A stretch of DNA of 63,036 nt, filler included, from Octopus bimaculoides (Eukaryota), in assembly GCF_001194135.2 (NCBI RefSeq). It is 7 parts of 7 records of this genome, joined end to end, with 100 filler letters (N's around TTAATTAATTAA, not from the genome) between each part and the next. Parts side by side here need not be neighbours in the genome. Positions count along the whole stretch, not along the records: positions 9,684 to 16,444 come from NW_026387767.1; 6 more parts are not named here. One strand, written 5' to 3'. Shown piece by piece: positions 3,514 through 16,444 of the stretch (position 1 is the stretch's first letter; every line of letters starts with the position of its first letter). The notes below the pieces were generated by a model. That model was given only the letters and a program-made list of their open reading frames with translations, did no database searches and was not told the origin of the DNA. Position numbers and translations under genes: made by a program.

Positions 3514-5693
3514 TATAGACAGAGACAGAGACACAGAGAGAGAAGGAGAAAGAGAATGATGCATACATATGTACAAACACTAGTATATACATATCATACA
3601 CGCTTGTATATACACTCTTACACGTGCGCACAGAGTATCACTAACACAGTCAATTATAAGTGCATGTATATGCTGAACAGTTTCTGAGCAGTTTTAAAAG
3701 TTTTAGTTTTCGTATTTTGCTTTAAAAAATATACAGTCTAGGTGCTGTCTGTGTTATATGTATCATTGAAATATCTTGATTTCTTATTTTTTTTCTTCTC
3801 AAAATAGGGAAGCATACTTATGTAGGTAAGAGAATATACATCATAGTATAACGATTTCTGTGAAAATTGTCTACTCTTGCAGGCATTCAATGTCTTGTAT
3901 TCACTCACTTAAATTTGCACGGATATGTGTACCATGAAAATCTGAAAGTGCTACAAGAAAAAATAAATACGTAACATAAACTGTACTAGCATACGATACA
4001 TTTTGTGCTTTATTCTTTCCTGAAAACATTTGCTTTAGTAACAAAAATCTTTTTTCTACGGAAAGATATGATTTCACGATGATTTAATTAATACATCTAC
4101 GTACTTAAGATTTCTTTATCTCCTAATATTTGGCAACGTTTCTGTACTGGTATTAACATAATAAAGAAGAGGATTCGTCAGACTTTATAATTCGATTAGC
4201 TTAACACTTATAACGATGAAATGTGTTATGAAAACTCTATAGCTATTCAATATTTTTACACAAGTGTGTTCATTGAAGTGAGATAACTTATGTCACAGTG
4301 ACATGAGAAGGTGTTCGTATGTATACATGTATAAATATTTACATACACATAAGTACACATATGTGTATGTATAAATATATGCGTCTGTGTGTATGTGCGC
4401 GTCTGTGTGCATATATCTCTCTCTATATATATATGCATACATATATACATACATATATATATATATGTGTGTATGTGTGTGTGTCTGTGTATATGTATAT
4501 ATATATATATATATATATNNNNNNNNNNNNNNNNNNNNNNNNNNNNNNNNNNNNNNNNNNNNNNNNNNNNNNNNNNNNNNNNNNNNNNNNNNNNNNNNNN
4601 NNNNNNNNNNNNNNNNNNNNNNNNNNNNNNNNNNNNNNNNNNNNNNNNNNNNNNNNNNNNNNNNNNNNNNNNNNNNNNNNNNNNNNNNNNNNNNNNNNNN
4701 NNNNNNNNNNTATAAATATATGCGTCTGTGTGTATGTGCGCGTCTGTGTGCATATATCTCTCTCTATATATATATGCATACATATATACATACATATACA
4801 TAATATATAGATATAGTAGCAGAAAAACACGTCACTGAATCGGGTAATTACTTTTACTGTTTATCGGGACCAACATTAAATGTGTTATATGTATAATTTA
4901 CTCCTCCTGTATGTGTGCATTTTTAGAAGAGAAAATTATGTAATAATTGAAGTAGGAGAAAGATCAATATCATTCTTTGTTGGCTATCTGCAAGTCGGGC
5001 ATTTCGTTGATGTTCAGTTTCAGATGAACATCGAGATTTCTTTCTCTGTCACTGATCTGCTTGGAGTGCACATGTCCCAAAGTTTTCTGATGCACGTTAC
5101 GCGTTTGTTTGGTTTTCGTTTTGTGACGGTCATTTTTTATGAGACATTTTTTTGATAATAAATACCAGTAAGTAATAGCGACATGAAATTCGGACGTAAT
5201 GTACAGTAATGCAAAGAAAATAAGCATATCATATAGAAGAATAGCTAAAGGGAATGAGAAATGTTTTTGATAAGGAATGCCAGTAAGTTGTGGTGAAATG
5301 AAACTACAAATGATGTGTGGTTATTAGTAAGTAATAGTGAAATGAATTTACAAATGTTGAATGGTCTGTGATTTTTTATGAAATTCCGACGCTATAATAC
5401 AGGAAAGCAGGGATATGCGTTGAGTGGTTGTGTTTCTGTTGGCGTGTCGATGATTTTCGTTTCGCTGTGAATTTGTGTCTGTGTGCGTATGGTTTCATTA
5501 TCAGAATGTCTCCGCTTATGTGAAAGACAGTTGTATATATATATCTGAACGGAGAAGTAAGAAAAATAGGTATACATGAAACATGAATGAATATACATAT
5601 CTGTGCGTGTGCGCGCGCGCGCGAGCATATGTGTGTATGCTCTTTTAGAGAGACATAGAGACAGAAACTCTCTTTTATTCATATAAATGTGTG

Positions 5694-9639: not shown

Positions 9640-10004
9640 NNNNNNNNNNNNNNNNNNNNNNNNNNNNNNNNNNNNNNNNNNNNCATTCACTTAACCATGA
9701 AACGATTCGTATCCAATTAACTAAAGGCTTGGTTTGTTTACGCTTTTCCCTCCGGTTTTTTGTTCTATGTGTGCCATAAATATCGCCATCCACTTTAGAG
9801 AAAAATTTGTAGTTTGGAATCAGTAGTTCTTTGACTGCTATTTCTAAATTTTCAGTATGTTGGAGAAGCAACTCAATTGCTAATCCCTGTATATTTATAA
9901 TGATAAATAGTTTTACCGATAAAGGTTTTTTTCATACTGAACTACTTGGCAGAATTGTTAATTATTAATTCTATTATTAATTGACGATTCTCTGCCCTTA
10001 TTCT

Positions 10005-10039
<35 letters not shown>

Positions 10040-10042
<3 letters not shown>

Positions 10043-10480
10043 TGAAATCTTTCAATATGGATGTTAGACTTCAGCAGGAGTGCATATTCTTTCTTTTTCA
10101 TAATTGTTATGAACTGGATTGACATGCACAGTCATTGTGGAAATGATCTCACAATCAGTTGGTGTAGGATCAGTTGGCTATTTGCAGATGACATAGTGCA
10201 GTTTGGCATATCAGAAGGTGGTCTCCAGCTTGGATGGACTGACCATATGAACTATGGATCAATCCAGGATGTCACCACAGTTATTCTACAGTGAACTTGA
10301 GAAGGGCAGTTGCACCCAAGGTTGCCCAAGGAAAAGGTATAAAGACAACCTCAAGTCCAATCTGAATTGGACTGAACTCCAGCCCAACAATCTTGAGAGA
10401 ACTGTGGTTGACCAGACCAATTGGTATAACGAAAGCTCTGAGGAAGCAAACAACCCATTTAGTGCATGCTGAAGATGACC
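10040..10480 (+). mobile_element. RTE-type LINE reverse transcriptase fragments, internally deleted
   Basis: LQQEC (QG motif region) and WLFADDIV (YADD-type catalytic motif), then a jump to the RTE C-terminal LGWTDH...QLFYSELEKG..GCPRKRYKDNLK. Confidence 0.75.
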
Positions 10481-10734
10481 TTCTGATGAGCCAAGTAGTC
10501 CCATGTCATCTTCAAATATATGCCAACCAATCCTTCACTCATTGTGATATCACTTCTACAATAGCTACACATGTTAACCCAGTTCACAAAATAGAGAGGT
10601 GAAAATACACCCTCCTGCCAAAGAACAACACCCACATTGGGAGGTTGTGAATTAGCATCATTCATCTGAACAAAAACATCTGGGTATTTGTATGGGGATT
10701 TGTTGCCCATAAATTCCAAAATCCTGCAAAGCCC

Positions 10735-10870
10735 TCCACAGCATGTTCTATAACCATGTAGACCATGTGGTCATATGCCTTTTCGAGGTCTACAAAACAA
10801 GCATACACCTCTTAGCAACATTCCCATGATTTCTTGAAGACCTTACAAAATTCAAATCGAAAAATATGTC
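10735..10870 (-). mobile_element. LINE RT fragment (FVDLEKAYD motif), inverted
   Basis: The minus frame reads KVFKKSWECC*EVYACFVDLEKAYDHMV, the non-LTR RT F.DL.KA.D motif. Confidence 0.7.
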
Positions 10871-11475
10871 ATATGTTCCTGTCACATGATAAAACAGATC
10901 ACATGATTAAACATCACCAACTGAAAAATGCTATGAATTGTTTTGCCAACCCAACAGTTTTGCATGCTCGTGATGAAAATTGCAGTTATTTTTTCAAAAA
11001 AACAAAAACGAATAGTAAAGAAGTTAGAAGCACTTAAAGTTATGTAATTTTAGCCAATGAAATAAGACTGTCTTCACAAGCAGAAGTGTAAACTGTTTGT
11101 TACCATGGCAATTCCAGTATATCGTTGTTTGTCCACAGAACTGTATACATATTTTTCATTTAATTCCAACCACTTGAAGATTTATATTTACATACAATTA
11201 GAATAATATTATTGCCATAGTCACAAGTTTTGCTTTGGACTTGCAAGAAATAACAAGCAAAATGAAACGAAAACACATGTACAGTTGATTAACGAAAACA
11301 TTGATGCAATAAAACATTTTTTGGCATAACTACAGATGTACAACCCACCAACTTTGTTGCCTTATAACTTTCAGAAAAATGGATACTTTTTAATGAAACT
11401 TTCAACAAATAATCACTTATAGTAAATAGGATAAACTTCAGATATTGTAAGAATCCTTCAAAATGTGATACAAAC

Positions 11476-14400
11476 ATGCAACCTGGTACACTTCTAATTT
11501 AAAACATGCAGTTTAAGATAGGCATGATTGCCAAAGTGAAAATCGAAAATGGCAGCCATCACAACCTCTCTCATCAATGGTCACATACACACTGAGTCTG
11601 CCACATCGAACTACAGCTGACTTAGCATAACGAGGCATAAATGCATTCAAACACAAATGCACACATACTCAACATTTGTAGAATAAAAACACCAATTTAC
11701 TATTTTAAAAAATCTATGTAAATTTACAATTAAAAATAACATAACTGTATTGAACTTCTATTGTTTCAGAGTCTTTTAAGGCTGTTTATTTTATTTTTAT
11801 AACAATACCCTTAGACATTGTAACAAATTGTCATGTCTGATATATGTTTCAATTTTGTAAGTGTACATGGCAAGTGTACACATCCCCACAGACTGGACAA
11901 AGTGCTGCCTATGCCAAAACGCCACTACGGAGAGACTTCAACAAGCTGATTACCATTACTTCCCCAACAGCAATGGCTACAAGACTCTGCACAAAAATAT
12001 TTATTTACTGTATGAACTTAGTGACTTTCCTATACCCATCAACCTAGCCAGGCTAGATGAAGGCAATCTTGGCATAGAGGAGACACTAAAGAGAAATGAT
12101 GCAAAGGACCTACCCAGCTGTTTCTTGATGTTTAGTAACACAAAAGTGGAAAGAGAGCAAGATAAAGGAAAGAGAGTGTGGCAGAGGGTCTTAGCAGAAA
12201 TGAAGAAAGGACCAAAAAGCAGCACATCAACACAAAAGAGAATATTTGTTTCATCTGTGAAAAGGAGGACATTTGGGAAAATATTTTGAGACATGCATCA
12301 ACAATGCAAATTGGTGTATCACTAAAGGAGCTTGCACTGACTTTGAGTGACAGCAAACTGCAAGCCAAGTTTAGTAGCTCTGATGCAGTTGCCCAAGAGC
12401 TGAAATATCATCTGCATTGCTACATAGGTCTGCAAAACAAAGCTCGTTCTTTAAAATCAGAAGAAAGGAGGCTTGAGAACAGTGATAGTAACAGTGGATA
12501 TCCATTTGCTTTCTCTGAACTACTTGCTTAGTTACATGAAAGTAGGAATGCTGCCAGGGTAGATCAAGTGACTGTATTCTAACAGGCTGATCTGACAAAA
12601 ATGTATTGTGAACAGCGAGTTAAGTTAGATGTGACAGAACCAAATGTGAATGCTACTAAGCTGAAGGAGAGGATCTTGTTCCATGTTCCAGAGGTAGAAG
12701 CATATAATTGTGGAAGAAACGTGATAATAGCTTTCCAAAAAGACATCAGACCAGTTCCATCTTCAGACACAATAAACTATAATGAAACCATACTTATCTA
12801 GAAAACTACTGATATACTCAGGAAGAAGATTCTCCAATGCTCCAGTTCATTCGATGGTAAGTTTGATAGCCAGTACCTAAACTCAAGTGTTCCTCCAGAG
12901 CTGCAACATTTTGTTACCTGTCTTGCCCAAAGGGCAGGTATCAAGGCACAAATAGAAAGTGGTGTGTCAAAAATTGATGTTGCAATGGGTCAATTGCTAC
13001 AGTTTAATTGCTGTTCCAAGAAAAAACTCACAGCTACAAGTTATAGACACTCAAATAAGAGAGAACCACCTTTATTTGTTTACTTGGGACTGTCTCTGTA
13101 TTCAAGGACTCAGAAAAAACAGTTAGTGGACAGACTGTTTGAACACAGATTGTTTGTCTCATATGATCACATACTTGAAATATCAAACCAGCTGGGCGAA
13201 GCTGTTGTTAGTCAGTATGTTTAAGATGACATAGTGTGTCCACCACAGATGAAGTGCAGCGTGTCCACACTTGTGGCTGTAGATAACATTGACCATGACC
13301 CAAAAGCAACAACATCATTCCATGGGACAAGTATTTCTCAGTTCCAGAGTACTGCAAGAGGAGAGCATCAAGCAGAACTGGCTCTAAAGAAAAAAGATCA
13401 AAAAGATTCCTGAGCTCCCAGAAAGCTACACAAAAGTAAAACAAGCTTTTCTGGAGAAGTGCCCTATACTTCCTACCTGGAGTGCCAAATCTAAAACCTG
13501 AGTATGACTGGTTGCAGTCAGTAGCTCTTGCAGAAATCTATGACAATACCATTAAAGTGACATGGTCAGCACACAATGCTCAACAAGTGAAAGATTTGCA
13601 GTTTGATGTGGATATGTCTGCCCTTATTCCCTTACTAAGAGACCATTCTAATGAGGTGTCAACTATCAAGCATCCCATGGACAAAGTCAAGGGCATCATA
13701 CATCACTTAAATCCAAGTCGGAGTCCAGTTCTGGCTGTAGATCAGCCACTGTTTGCACTGGACAAATAGATTCAATGGAAGTGGCCACAAATGGATGGCA
13801 GTTTTGTCATACTAATGGGCTCACTGCACACTGATATGGCCGCTTTAAGAGTAGCCGGTAGTTTGCGCAAAAGCAGTGGGTGGACAACAGTCAGTGATGA
13901 AGCTGGCATTGCAACCTCTGGCACAACTGATTCTTTCTTGTCTGCTACTAGTGTAACAAAAACAAGAAGAGTACATCAGGTAACATCCTGCAGCTTGTAT
14001 CAGCTAAAGAAAAGGGCATATGAGGCAAGTGATAAGTCTAGGAGTTTTAATGATTGGTGTGCCAAATGAGAAGCTCAGGAACCCCAGTTCTGGTACTGGA
14101 ACATGGTACATTCTCGGGTTTATCAGATCCATCAGGGTGGGAGATTCCACAGGGTATCTTGCCTCAATGAATGCCTTGATGTACTTCTTTGCCAATGACA
14201 GCACCCATTATGCAAGATCTGTGCACATCAATGATATGCGAAAGCTGCTTGAGGCCAATCCATCTGTCAATGAAGAGTTTGCAGCAGGAAGGTTTGAGAT
14301 CCACAAGATGGAAAGACTGTTCTCTGCCATCGGAGTGGATCAAGTCCATGAGCAAAATAATGCTCTAATCAAGGAAGATGGAGGAGCTGTAGGTATCATG

Positions 14401-16444
14401 GACAATTAGTCTGCCTTGCTAAGATGGATGGCGTCAGGGCTAGAGATATGTCATCTTGTTGGGGAATATGATGAGTTATCAAAAATCAGGCAGCGTACCA
14501 ATGCATCACACCACAAACACATTCCTTCTGTCCAAAAGACATTCCTGGAAGATGTGCAGAATTTTTGTAAAACAGTGGAAGAATTCAGAAATCCATTCTT
14601 GGATTAAACATTCTCTGAGCTGCTGATACTAATTTCCAAAGATGCAATGGACAGTGATGCAGCTGATACTTTGAAGAACTACGTTCCTGAAGGAATGAAG
14701 TAATTTGAGTGGTTTATATTTAATCTAAAAAATATATGTCACACTTTGAAGTAGAACAACTTCAAAATATTTAACAAGCCCAGAACAAAGACTGCAAGGA
14801 AGCTGGATAATGCTGTGGAACAAGACTGCAACCTTTTTGCAAACTTGTTCATCACTTCCCAAACAAGACAAGTAGATCTCGAAGAATTCTTCAGGTGCGA
14901 AAATGCTAACTTCCCAGCTTCCATCAGTTCAAACGGAGATTTCTACCGTGGAACGAAATCAGACCTTATAGCATGCCTAAAGAAGCAGGTGGAAATGTTA
15001 GCAAACAGGCCAGAAACTGATGCTATATTCATTGACAGAGCACACCTAGCACACGATATTCAACACAAGCATCTAACCTTCAAGGACTATGCTGAACATG
15101 ACTTTGTTGGAAAGATAAACAAATATGCTGAGAGGTACAGACATACTTACAATTCACAGTCACTGAAATCATTCATGAGATTACAAAGAAGTAGGGGATC
15201 CTGACACTGAGTAATAGAAAAAGGAAAGGTTCCCCAAAATTGGCCCAGTTTTCTTCAAAAGGAGGAGAACAAAAAAGAACTGTATACTTTCCTAGCCCAT
15301 AAGCTGAAACAAGCTACTGGTGGACAAGTGTTTACTACAGCCATGTCATCATGTGTTAGCAATAAAGAAGATGAGGTAAAACACTTGATGGAAGACATGA
15401 CCGACTGTTCCCATGAAGAAGCTGACACGAGGATTTTTGTCCATGTCATGAATGCTGTGAAGCAGAGCTACATCACTAGAGCAACCATCCTTGCAAATGA
15501 CATTGATATAGTTGTCATAGCAGTGGCAACATTCTCTGTTTTGAAGAGAAGTGGTCTAGACTTGTGGGTTGCGTACAGAATGGATAAAAGCAGGAGATGG
15601 TAACCAATCCTCAGCATAGTCACTAAGCTCGGGGAAAAGGCCTGTAGGTTATGCAGTGACTGGCTGTGATACAGTGAATGCTTTTAAAGAAAGAGGCTAA
15701 AAATCCTGCTTTCAAACCTGGGATATTTTTCCTCAAGCCAATAACACATTTCACCAGCTGTCTGCACCTTGTGCGGACATCACAGAAGATCAGATGCAAG
15801 TAATAGAAAGATTTGTTGTTCTACTGTATGATGGATCCAGTTCGGAGTTGTCTGTAAATAAAGCCTGGAAAATCATGTTTGCAGAAAAGAACAGACACTA
15901 TGATACAATCCCACCCACATGAGGAGCTCTTATTCAGCACATCCAATGAGTTACATATCAGGCAGGGCACATATGGGGCCAGGCTCTGCAGATGAAGCCA
16001 GCACTGCCATCACCTATCACCTGGAGGTCGAAAAAAATGACAATGGCACATTCACTGTTCACTGGACTGAACTAAGAGCCATAGCAGAACAATGCCAAGC
16101 ACTTAAAAAGTGCCAATGCAAAACTGAGTGTGCAGGACGTTGCACACGCAAGAAGTCAGCCCTTTGTGCCTGTACATACATTTGATTGATGATGAAACCT
16201 GTATAACCTGAATTAGTGAAGAAGATAGAAAAATCCTTCAAAAGATAAATATAAAGCTATTTGTGTAAAATACTGCATAATAAATAACGTTTATTCTAAT
16301 AAAACTTATTTCCTGTTCATCACAATTATTAATTTTTAATGCTGGACGCCATCTTGGATTTTGGCCACCATTTTCGATTTTCACATTGCCAATCATGCCT
16401 ATTTTAAAGTGCATATTTTAAACTATAGGCGTGCCACACTGCAT
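11476..16444 (+). mobile_element. Academ (AcademX-type) DNA transposon, decayed; outer ends not resolved
   Basis: Inverted repeat: atgcagtttaagataggcatgattgccaaagtgaaaatcgaaaatgg (~11505-11551) vs ccattttcgattttcacattgccaatcatgcctattttaaagtgcat (~16368-16414). Degenerate similarity continues outward until the gap at 16445. The repeat encloses the broken ORF below. The left arm may extend to ~10.9 kb. Confidence 0.75.
11867..16185 (+). pseudogene. Academ transposase-XPG nuclease-Cys finger polyprotein (~1400 aa), broken into more than 10 ORF fragments
   Basis: Collinear fragments: DWTKCCLCQ, CFICEK...QELKYHLHC, AVDNIDHDPKATTSFHGTSIS, PVLAVDQPLFAL, MGSLHTDM, FSAIGVDQVHEQNNALIKEDGGAVG, EFFRCEN..FPASIS, CSHEEADTRIFVH, ANDIDIVVIAV, GCDTVNAF (XPG/FEN-like PIN and H3TH motifs), C-terminal CQCKTECAGRC..KKSALCAC. 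Confidence 0.8.

What the first reader, a model, noticed from the sequence alone, without database searches (positions are those of the whole stretch)
11476..16444. Near-complete Academ (AcademX) transposon carrying an XPG/flap-endonuclease domain and a Cys-rich finger
Seen: one collinear ~4.3-kb reading frame broken into more than 10 pieces, flanked by inverted repeats. It carries N-terminal Cys motifs, an acidic core (AVDNIDHD, AVDQPL, MGSLHTDM, DQVHEQNN), XPG-like HEEADTR, DIDIVV and GCDT motifs, and a C-terminal Cys cluster. Established: this transposase + XPG nuclease + Cys finger architecture in one ~1500-aa protein defines the poorly studied Academ superfamily, and such proteins are often annotated as hypothetical. 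Inference: the whole ancestral protein can be reconstructed from this copy, and the role of the second nuclease is not established. The right end is cut by an unsized gap, so termini and TSD cannot be read.
Basis: partly seen in the sequence, partly recalled or inferred. Interest (0 to 1): 0.7.

Follow-up and report, generated by a model that had tools for sequence, protein, structure and literature searches.

The report
Decayed Academ DNA transposon copy
This is a dead, mutation-riddled copy of an Academ-type cut-and-paste DNA transposon in a cephalopod-like genome; it is an ordinary genomic fossil of a known but little-studied transposon kind whose single giant protein joins a transposase to a flap-endonuclease-like nuclease.

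Summary
Window 11420-16444 (+) is one transposon copy with about 140-nt terminal inverted repeats. It carries a single collinear reading frame of about 1440 codons (11867-16182), broken by 6 frameshifts and 16 stops.

An intact relative exists (P0001, 1472 aa, 78% identical to the stitched protein; 87% DNA identity). That element is 5173 bp and appears in four independent assemblies.

Profile comparison with a published bivalve consensus labelled 'DNA/Academ-1' (1494-aa ORF) gives collinear homology over the whole protein (E 1.4e-80).

An AlphaFold model of the C-terminal 413 aa (pLDDT 85) matches only 5'-nuclease/FEN-superfamily structures: T5 flap endonuclease, ExoIX, Rat1/Xrn1, Rad2/XPG, FEN1 and GEN1. 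No sequence profile (Pfam XPG_N/XPG_I, PDB) detects this, and the nearest folds are phage and bacterial FENs, not XPG itself.

- The left terminus is at 11420, not 11476.
- About 45 bp of the right end are missing.
- The copy has lost coding segments, including a conserved acidic nuclease motif, so it cannot yield the whole ancestral protein by itself.
- The target-site duplication (TSD) could not be settled.

It is an ordinary member of a known, very abundant family and of low interest.

The parts
11420..11558 (+). Left terminal inverted repeat. The terminus reads 5'-TAGTAAATAGGATAAAC (5'-TAGTGTAGAAGATA in the intact relative).
   Evidence: Inverted repeat I1. Homology to the intact element reaches 11430 by BLAST and 11420/11421 by eye and MAFFT. 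Four independent left flanks all have T before AGTG.
11867..16182 (+). Pseudogene of the single Academ protein (about 1440 codons; 6 frameshifts, 16 in-frame stops, several in-frame deletions).
   Evidence: Three-frame translation and stitching. 78% identity over 100% of length to intact P0001. Indel list.
11867..12430 (+). N-terminal Cys/His motifs (WTKCCLCQ ... KYHxSC lost here; ICFICEKED ... ELKYHLHCY). Presumed zinc-binding DNA-recognition region.
   Evidence: Invariant C/H columns C85, C127, C130, H180 and C183 in the 17-sequence alignment. No Pfam family matches. The function is inferred.
13060..14640 (+). Transposase core with the conserved acidic motifs AVDNIDHD (13276), AVDQPL (13734), GSLHTDM (13815, family consensus GGLHIEM) and DQVHEQNN (14338).
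   Evidence: Invariant D471/D474, D633, H662/E664, D841/H844/E845 in P0001 numbering. The same motifs align in the published bivalve Academ-1 ORF. [quoted passage not shown]
15000..15700 (+). FEN/XPG-like PIN-type 5'-nuclease domain: IFIDRAH (15025), site of the lost DVVFD motif (18-bp deletion at about 15143), HEEADTR (15412), NDIDIVV (15496), TGCDTV (15659), then the remnant of the GKGKK loop.
   Evidence: AF2 model of the homologous region of P0001 (pLDDT 84.8). Foldseek hits are only 5'-nuclease superfamily members. Acidic residues are invariant. Deletion listed.
15700..16182 (+). C-terminal helical region (LYD..S, IPPT, WGW remnants) and Cys-rich cluster CQCKTECAGRC...LCAC (16111-16182, 15 bp deleted at 16165).
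   Evidence: Invariant or nearly invariant Cys columns (P0001 numbering) C1437, C1443, C1445, C1449, C1453, C1455, C1462, C1466 and C1468. The same KCGCK..C..RRC.C....L.CT pattern occurs in the bivalve Academ ORF. The AF2 model is of low confidence here.
16306..16444 (+). Right terminal inverted repeat, truncated by the piece's edge. About 45 nt, including the terminus ...TATCTTCTACACTA, are missing.
   Evidence: Inverted repeat I1. Global alignment with the intact element leaves 47 nt of L001 (to 5378; the element ends at 5376) unmatched.

Best explanation
Window 11420-16444 is a dead, nearly full-length copy of an autonomous Academ DNA transposon. It belongs to the nuclease-bearing lineage that Kojima (2020) called AcademX, and it sits in a cephalopod-type genome.

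**Shown.** The element had about 140-nt terminal inverted repeats ending 5'-TAG...CTA-3'. It had one intron-less gene for a protein of about 1470 aa, built in this order:
- two Cys/His motifs;
- a transposase core with conserved acidic motifs DNxDH, DQP, HxE and DxxxEQ;
- a PIN-like 5'-flap-endonuclease domain with a full set of conserved acidic residues (IDG, D..FD, EEAD, DTD, GCD) and a GKGKK loop;
- a helical region;
- a Cys-rich cluster.

**Inferred.**
- The core is an RNase-H-like DDE transposase that binds the repeats, nicks the 3' ends and joins them to a staggered target.
- The fused FEN-like domain cuts the other (5', non-transferred) strand, or trims the 5' flaps at the excision or integration intermediate. 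Full double-strand excision would then need two different active sites in one polypeptide, in the way Tn7 uses TnsB plus TnsA.

**State of this copy.** It can do none of this. It carries 6 frameshifts, 16 stops and deletions, and it is 13% diverged from the intact relative.
For: - **Anatomy.** Terminal inverted repeats. A single collinear broken ORF.
- **Intact relative.** P0001 (1472 aa) lies on four independent contigs that share only a 5173-bp element.
- **Link to Academ.** Whole-length collinear profile match to the ORF of the published DNA/Academ-1 consensus (E 1.4e-80). DNxDH, DQPLY, GGxHxEM, D..(I/H)EQ, IDG, VFD, DTD, TGCD, G.GKK, PPT, WGW and the Cys cluster all align. Both published bivalve consensuses seen also end 5'-TAG.
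- **AcademX, not AcademH.** No helicase domain in any of five full-length relatives. There is no room for a second gene in the 5.17-kb element.
- **Nuclease fold.** AF2 pLDDT 84.8, pTM 0.84. Foldseek gives T5 FEN E 2.1e-4 prob 1.0, ExoIX, mycobacterial FEN, Rat1/Xrn1, Rad2, FEN1, XPG and GEN1, and nothing else above noise. The acidic residues are invariant across crab, lancelet, mollusc and other relatives.
- **Abundance.** The core search returned 406 proteins. The nuclease module has 29,920 representative clusters at E <= 1e-3. The named sources are all animals.
Against: - The RNase-H fold of the core could not be shown. The AF2 model was poor (pLDDT 56.7) and its Foldseek hits were noise.
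- No sequence profile links the nuclease domain to XPG or FEN1.
- The 3-4-bp TSD said to mark AcademX (PMC10045372, citing Kojima 2020) could not be confirmed. The one locus with both flanks fits AAT/AAT only if the termini are AG...CT, and fits TA/TA if they are G...C. With the TAG...CTA termini it shows no duplication. A second contig shows none except under the TA reading.
- The division of labour between the two nucleases is pure inference. No experiment on any Academ transposase was found in the library searched.
- I could not compare directly with Repbase Academ proteins, and the defining papers were not held.
Confidence: 0.88

Rival explanations
1. It is a transposon of another DDE superfamily common in cephalopods (Zisupton/KDZ, CMC/EnSpm or similar) that happens to carry a PIN-like nuclease.
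For: A mollusc survey reports Academ as nearly confined to bivalves, and Zisupton, Novosib and Merlin as nearly confined to cephalopods (PMC10294476). Pfam recognises nothing in the core except DUF6589.
Against: No KDZ, Transposase_21/23/24 or other transposase Pfam family was listed for the window's pieces (E <= 1) or for five intact relatives (E <= 0.1). There is whole-length collinear homology to a consensus that the same survey curated as DNA/Academ-1 (E 1.4e-80). Close relatives occur in Octopus bimaculoides and Acanthosepion, so Academ is present in cephalopods.
Confidence: 0.04
2. It is Academ, but the FEN-like domain does not take part in strand cleavage at the transposon ends. Instead it processes flaps or gaps during repair of the donor or target site, or acts on RNA (its fold also resembles Xrn1/Rat1).
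For: Foldseek ranks the 5'-3' exoribonucleases Rat1 and Xrn1 among the top hits (ranks 2, 6, 10). Most DDE transposases cut both strands without a second nuclease (general knowledge). PMC10045372 relates the nuclease-versus-helicase difference to TSD length, which points to the integration or repair step.
Against: The domain is fused to the transposase, and its acidic residues are invariant across phyla. That argues for a core catalytic role in transposition. Nothing here separates the two roles.
Confidence: 0.3
3. It is a decayed host gene, or a domesticated transposase gene, rather than a mobile-element copy.
For: All relatives in databases are annotated only as hypothetical or uncharacterized proteins.
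Against: The frame is flanked by 140-nt inverted repeats. The same 5173-bp unit sits between different flanks in different contigs. The gene has no introns. There are thousands of diverged copies and fragments. This copy is riddled with stops.
Confidence: 0.01

Closest known systems
Academ superfamily, nuclease-bearing lineage (AcademX of Kojima 2020; 'DNA/Academ-1' in RepeatMasker-style libraries), e.g. Academ_A.kagoshimensis_2 from the bivalve Anadara kagoshimensis (PMC10294476)
   Same: - A 5-6.5 kb element with terminal inverted repeats ending 5'-TAG...CTA-3'.
- One ORF of about 1470-1500 aa.
- The same order of N-terminal Cys/His motifs, acidic core motifs, FEN-like nuclease motifs, PPT/WGW region and C-terminal Cys cluster.
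- Collinear profile match with E 1.4e-80.
   Different: - Only about 22-26% amino-acid identity to the bivalve element.
- HEEADTR here corresponds to ASADADV there.
- The host is cephalopod-like, where a survey found Academ scarce.
- This copy is dead and lacks its last 45 bp or so.
- The TSD is not established here.
AcademH (helicase-encoding Academ lineage; Kojima 2020, as cited in PMC10045372 and PMC10799480)
   Same: By the literature it is the same superfamily, and so presumably has a homologous transposase core. This was not tested here, because no AcademH sequence was available.
   Different: AcademH encodes a helicase and makes 9-10-bp TSDs. The family here has no helicase domain and carries a FEN-like nuclease instead.
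Structure-specific 5' nucleases: T5 D15 flap endonuclease, E. coli ExoIX, FEN1, XPG/Rad2, GEN1, Xrn1/Rat1
   Same: The predicted fold of the nuclease domain matches these and nothing else. The pattern of acidic residues on successive strand ends, plus a glycine/lysine-rich loop after the last Asp, resembles the FEN active site and H3TH motif. That motif mapping is from my own knowledge of FEN1, not a computed alignment.
   Different: - No detectable sequence-profile similarity.
- TM-scores are modest (0.49 relative to T5 FEN).
- The domain is fused to a transposase and followed by a family-specific helical and Cys-rich extension.
- Rad2/XPG is not the nearest structure.
Tn7 TnsA/TnsB heteromeric transposase
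   Same: As a working analogy only: a DDE enzyme for the 3' ends and a second, unrelated nuclease for the 5' ends.
   Different: TnsA is a restriction-endonuclease-fold protein and a separate polypeptide. There is no homology, and the analogy is untested for Academ.

Membership tests
Academ superfamily | Transposase homologous to named Academ transposases | tested here: met
   [quoted passage not shown] Result: 256.9 bits, E 1.4e-80, three collinear segments covering profile positions 75-1492. BLASTP of P0001 gives E 3e-43 and 6.6e-13; the stitched window protein gives 3.9e-18 and 1.9e-5. No direct Repbase comparison was possible.
Academ superfamily | DDE catalytic core with an RNase-H-like fold | tested here: inconclusive
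   Conserved acidic motifs are invariant and shared with the bivalve Academ ORF. The AF2 model of the core was poor (pLDDT 56.7) and its Foldseek hits were noise.
Academ superfamily | Terminal inverted repeats | tested here: met
   83-nt arms at 82% in the window. About 140-nt arms in the intact relative, with termini 5'-TAGTGTAGAAGATA. The two bivalve Academ consensuses read also start 5'-TAG.
AcademX lineage | Single protein joining the transposase to an XPG/FEN-type nuclease (my recollection of Kojima 2020; the paper was not held) | tested here: met
   One ORF of 1472 aa in the intact relative. Its C-terminal domain folds as a 5' nuclease.
AcademX lineage | No helicase | tested here: met
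   No DEAD, Helicase_C or PIF1 hits in five full-length relatives at E <= 0.1. The 5173-bp element has a single called gene.
AcademX lineage | 3- or 4-bp target-site duplication (PMC10045372, citing Kojima 2020) | tested here: inconclusive
   The window's right end is missing. The relative locus L001/L002 gives AAT|AG...CT|AAT under one choice of boundary, TA|G...C|TA under another, and none with TAG...CTA. L003 fits only the TA reading, and it may be a chimeric assembly.
AcademX lineage | C-terminal Cys-rich putative zinc finger | tested here: met
   Conserved Cys columns. The same pattern occurs in the bivalve Academ ORF. Metal binding was not tested, the AF2 model has low confidence there, and no Pfam family matches.
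XPG/Rad2-FEN1 family (Pfam XPG_N, XPG_I) | Sequence-profile match to XPG_N and XPG_I | tested here: not met
   No such Pfam hit for the window pieces, for full-length relatives, or for 13 isolated C-terminal regions even at E <= 10. PDB profile searches were empty or noise.
PIN-like 5'-nuclease (FEN) structural superfamily | PIN-like alpha/beta fold with a helical arch/H3TH region, matching solved 5' nucleases | tested here: met
   Foldseek against PDB: 5hml_A T5 FEN E 2.1e-4, prob 1.0, TM(target) 0.49. ExoIX, Mycobacterium FEN, Rat1/Xrn1, Rad2, FEN1, XPG and GEN1 fill ranks 1-15, 18 and 21.
PIN-like 5'-nuclease (FEN) structural superfamily | Cluster of conserved metal-binding carboxylates | tested here: inconclusive
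   D1073, D1111, D1115, E1206, E1207, D1209, D1234, D1236 and D1295 of P0001 are invariant in 17 sequences. Their equivalence to FEN1 D34, D86, E158, E160, D179, D181 and D233 is my motif-level inference, not a computed superposition.
KDZ/Zisupton and CMC (EnSpm) superfamilies | Match to the KDZ transposase or Transposase_21/23/24 Pfam families | tested here: not met
   None listed for the window pieces at E <= 1 or for five intact relatives at E <= 0.1. Only DUF6589 appears (P0004, E 6e-8).

The most novel reading that the evidence does not exclude
The fused FEN-like domain is the enzyme that cuts the non-transferred 5' strand at Academ ends. Academ transposases would then be single-chain, two-nuclease transposases (DDE plus flap endonuclease), a eukaryotic counterpart of the Tn7 TnsA/TnsB arrangement built from a different fold. 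Intact cephalopod or marine-animal copies such as P0001 are recent enough to be tested directly.
Probability: 0.35. Interest if true: 0.5.

Novelty: new member of a known kind. Interest (0 to 1): 0.15.

Why it matters
For genome annotation, it shows that Academ elements do occur in cephalopod-type genomes, where an automated survey found them scarce. It also shows that many 'hypothetical proteins' of about 1500 aa in animal genomes are Academ transposases.

For mechanism, the only added value is modest. A confident model places the second domain in the flap-endonuclease fold with all acidic residues conserved. Nearly identical intact copies (99.4-100% among four assemblies) give a candidate active element for testing why a cut-and-paste transposase carries a second nuclease.

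The window copy itself is a neutral fossil with no function.

Tried and rejected
- **Pfam on the window's own pieces and on isolated domains.** Nothing useful.
- **PDB sequence-profile searches.** The full-length and the C-terminal alignments gave nothing or noise, such as apolipoprotein A-I.
- **AF2 of the transposase core with a 13-sequence alignment.** pLDDT was 56.7 and the Foldseek hits were meaningless, so the RNase-H fold is unproven here.
- **Defining papers.** Kojima 2020 and Yuan & Wessler 2011 are not held. 'XPG nuclease' together with Academ occurs in no held paper. DUF6589 is mentioned once, uninformatively.
- **Second homolog search, with the core profile.** It returned only close, unnamed animal relatives and no named Academ or fungal AcademH protein.
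- **TSD hunt.**
  - The crab relative L005 has inner inverted repeats, but its true ends could not be fixed from a single copy.
- **Reverse-transcriptase (RT) check of the left flank.** I compared it with the RT part of the chimeric cuttlefish protein P0024 and found no match.
- **Rfam on the piece.** No hits.
- **Rejected readings.** KDZ/Zisupton/CMC (no profile hits, positive Academ anchor). Host gene (inverted repeats, multiple copies with different flanks, decay).


Full report
**What is in the window**

The piece 9684-16444 contains one long inverted repeat, with arms at 11476-11558 and 16362-16444 (83 nt, 82% complementary). Between the arms, a three-frame translation shows a single collinear reading frame from 11867 to 16182 on the + strand. 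It hops among all three frames and is interrupted by stops.

- WTKCCLCQ (11894)
- AVDNIDHD (13276)
- AVDQPL (13734)
- MGSLHTDM (13815)
- DQVHEQNN (14338)
- HEEADTR (15412)
- NDIDIVV (15496)
- TGCDTV (15659)
- the terminal Cys cluster (16111-16182)

I joined the pieces into a 1440-residue query with X at each stop.

**Relatives and the state of this copy**

The stitched protein finds an intact 1472-aa protein, P0001, at 78% identity over its whole length. It also finds an Octopus bimaculoides fragment at 77%. About fifteen full-length proteins of 1420-1550 aa match at roughly 40% identity. Where they have names, these come from a crab (Petrolisthes) and a lancelet (Branchiostoma), and all are called hypothetical or uncharacterized.

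P0001 is encoded on four contigs from independent assemblies. These contigs are 99.4-100% identical to one another across the element. L001 and L003 share only L001 204-5378, and their flanks differ, so the mobile unit is about 5173 bp.

The window copy aligns to that unit at 87% DNA identity. The alignment reveals:
- six frameshifting indels: 12150 +2, 13390 +1, 13472 -20, 14109 -17, 15651 -11, 16035 -1;
- sixteen in-frame stops;
- several in-frame deletions, including 18 bp at about 15143 that remove the conserved DVVFD motif, and 15 bp at 16165 inside the Cys cluster.

It is therefore a dead copy. It is near-complete in length but not in information.

**Ends**

Four independent left flanks (window, L001/L002, L003 and the metagenome contig L006) all read T-AGTG at the junction. 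The terminus is therefore 5'-TAGTGTAGAAGATA, and the window element starts at 11420.

In the intact relative the inverted repeats are about 140 nt long with one internal indel. On the right, the piece's edge removes about 45 nt.

The target-site duplication could not be settled:
- L001/L002 reads AAT|AG...CT|AAT under one choice of boundary.
- It reads TA|G...C|TA under another.
- It shows no duplication with the palindromic TAG...CTA ends.
- L003 has unequal flanks except under the TA reading, and it may be a chimeric short-read assembly.

**Is it Academ?**

The papers that define the superfamily were not available, and Pfam has no Academ model. Relatives hit only DUF6589, between the second and third acidic motifs.

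I found an anchor in the supplement of a mollusc transposon survey, PMC10294476. [quoted passage not shown] That survey classified its elements with HMMs built from Yuan & Wessler's superfamily alignments and checked them for terminal inverted repeats and TSDs.

Its coding region translates into one uninterrupted 1494-aa protein. A profile of my 17 full-length relatives matches that protein collinearly in three segments covering profile positions 75-1492 (256.9 bits, E 1.4e-80). BLASTP of P0001 gives E 3e-43 and 6.6e-13. The stitched window protein gives 3.9e-18 and 1.9e-5.

The aligned columns include all the signature motifs:

| This family | Bivalve Academ-1 ORF |
|---|---|
| AVDNIDHN | VADNVDHN |
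| AADQPLY | TFDQPLY |
| GGLHIEMA | GGFHLEMS |
| AIDQAHEQ | ADLIIEQ |
| IDGSA | IDGGS |
| DIVFD | VVVFD |
| NDTDV | EDTDL |
| TGCD..S.F.GKGKK | TGCDTTSRLYGIGKK |

PPT, WGW and the Cys cluster KCGCK..C..RRC.C also align. Both bivalve consensuses I read begin 5'-TAG, like this element.

No KDZ, CMC or other transposase Pfam family was listed for the window's pieces at E <= 1 or for five intact relatives at E <= 0.1. No relative carries a helicase domain, and the element has a single gene. It therefore belongs to the nuclease-bearing lineage (AcademX) rather than AcademH, which is reported to make 9-10-bp TSDs against 3-4 bp for AcademX.

**The second nuclease**

Sequence profiles do not connect the HEEADTR region to XPG or FEN1:
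- Pfam on the window pieces, on full-length relatives, and on 13 isolated C-terminal regions at E <= 10 found nothing relevant.
- PDB profile searches found nothing or noise.

Structure does connect it. An AlphaFold2 model of P0001 residues 1060-1472, built with a 13-sequence alignment, is confident through the nuclease and helical parts (mean pLDDT 84.8, pTM 0.84). It is unreliable only in the Cys cluster.

Foldseek against the PDB returns, above noise, only members of the PIN-like 5'-nuclease superfamily:
- T5 D15 flap endonuclease (E 2.1e-4, probability 1.0, TM 0.49 relative to the target)
- T5 exonuclease
- E. coli ExoIX
- Mycobacterium flap endonuclease
- Rat1 and Xrn1
- yeast Rad2
- human and archaeal FEN1
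- human XPG
- GEN1

The carboxylates D1073, D1111, D1115, E1206, E1207, D1209, D1234, D1236 and D1295 of P0001 are invariant in all 17 relatives. Their spacing on IDG, D..FD, EEAD, DTD and GCD, followed by a GKGKK loop, resembles the FEN1 active site and H3TH motif. That mapping is my own inference from knowledge of FEN1.

So 'XPG-like' is right at the level of fold and active-site pattern. The domain is not a sequence-level member of the XPG/Rad2 family, and its nearest solved structures are phage and bacterial FENs.

**The core**

The transposase core has invariant acidic motifs shared with the bivalve Academ ORF. However, my AlphaFold2 model of it was poor (pLDDT 56.7) and its fold search was noise. 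The RNase-H-like DDE fold therefore rests on the literature's definition of Academ, not on a test made here.

**How it most likely works**

The domain order, the conservation and the fold are shown. The rest is inferred:
- The N-terminal Cys/His motifs and the core recognise the 140-nt ends.
- The DDE core nicks and transfers the 3' ends.
- The fused flap-endonuclease domain cuts or trims the 5' strand.

I give about 0.35 to the specific two-nuclease end-cleavage model. A repair or flap-trimming role is about equally likely. Mutating the two sets of acidic residues separately in an intact copy would decide between them.

**Abundance and novelty**

The family is very common. The core profile search returned 406 proteins, the named ones all from animals. 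The nuclease-plus-Cys module has 29,920 representative clusters at E <= 1e-3 and 2,654 at E <= 1e-30.

The finding is therefore a correct identification of an ordinary fossil of a known superfamily. The only mildly new points are these:
- Academ elements are present in cephalopod-type genomes (Octopus bimaculoides, Acanthosepion and this window), whereas an automated survey reported Academ almost only in bivalves among molluscs.
- An apparently young, intact family exists that could be used for experiments.

Noticed in passing
window 11546-11553 (-) and 16348-16355 (+); L001 element positions 134 (-) and 5032/5051 (+); L005 about 2203/2220 and 7873/7890: A GCCATYTT motif (AAGATGGC-type, like a YY1 site) sits at the inner edge of both inverted-repeat arms in the window copy, in the intact relative and in the crab relative. 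In the crab it forms GGCGGCCATTTTCCAAGATGGCCGCC. The count in the window is not above chance (2 against 0.79 expected), but the position is conserved across phyla. It could be a transposase-binding site or a promoter element.
   Followed up: partly
L006 260-327 (JGI metagenome contig Ga0081606_1152451): This contig shares only the terminal 68 nt or so (81%) with the octopus-type Academ end, including 5'-TAGTGTAGAAGATA. After that it is unrelated. It may be a non-autonomous derivative or a sister family in another organism.
   Followed up: partly
window 10061-10808: The left flank holds reverse-transcriptase-like strings in opposite orientations (FVDLEKAYD on the - strand, LFADD on the + strand) and a 54-nt inverted repeat (10179-10232 / 10465-10518, 76%). 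This suggests rearranged retroelement debris. Pfam found nothing, and the RT part of P0024 does not match.
   Followed up: partly
window 10007-10038: A perfect (TA)16 microsatellite.
   Followed up: yes
P0024 (Acanthosepion pharaonis, 921 aa): This annotated cuttlefish 'reverse transcriptase domain-containing' protein is a chimeric gene model. Its residues from about 208 onward are pieces of an Academ transposase (they match window 13234-16024), joined to an RVT_1 domain.
   Followed up: partly
P0142 (470 aa), P0143 (440 aa) and similar representatives: Some proteins consist of the complete FEN-like plus Cys-rich module alone, without the transposase core. They may be fragments of gene calls, or free-standing (domesticated?) copies of the module.
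   Followed up: no
PMC10294476: The survey's statement that Academ is almost restricted to bivalves among molluscs does not fit the clear Academ proteins from Octopus bimaculoides (A0A0L8FV64), Acanthosepion and this window. Automated libraries probably leave them unclassified.
   Followed up: partly
L001 5623-6144: A 173-aa gene with no Pfam hit is called just outside the right end of the intact element, in flank shared by L001 and L002. It was not examined.
   Followed up: no
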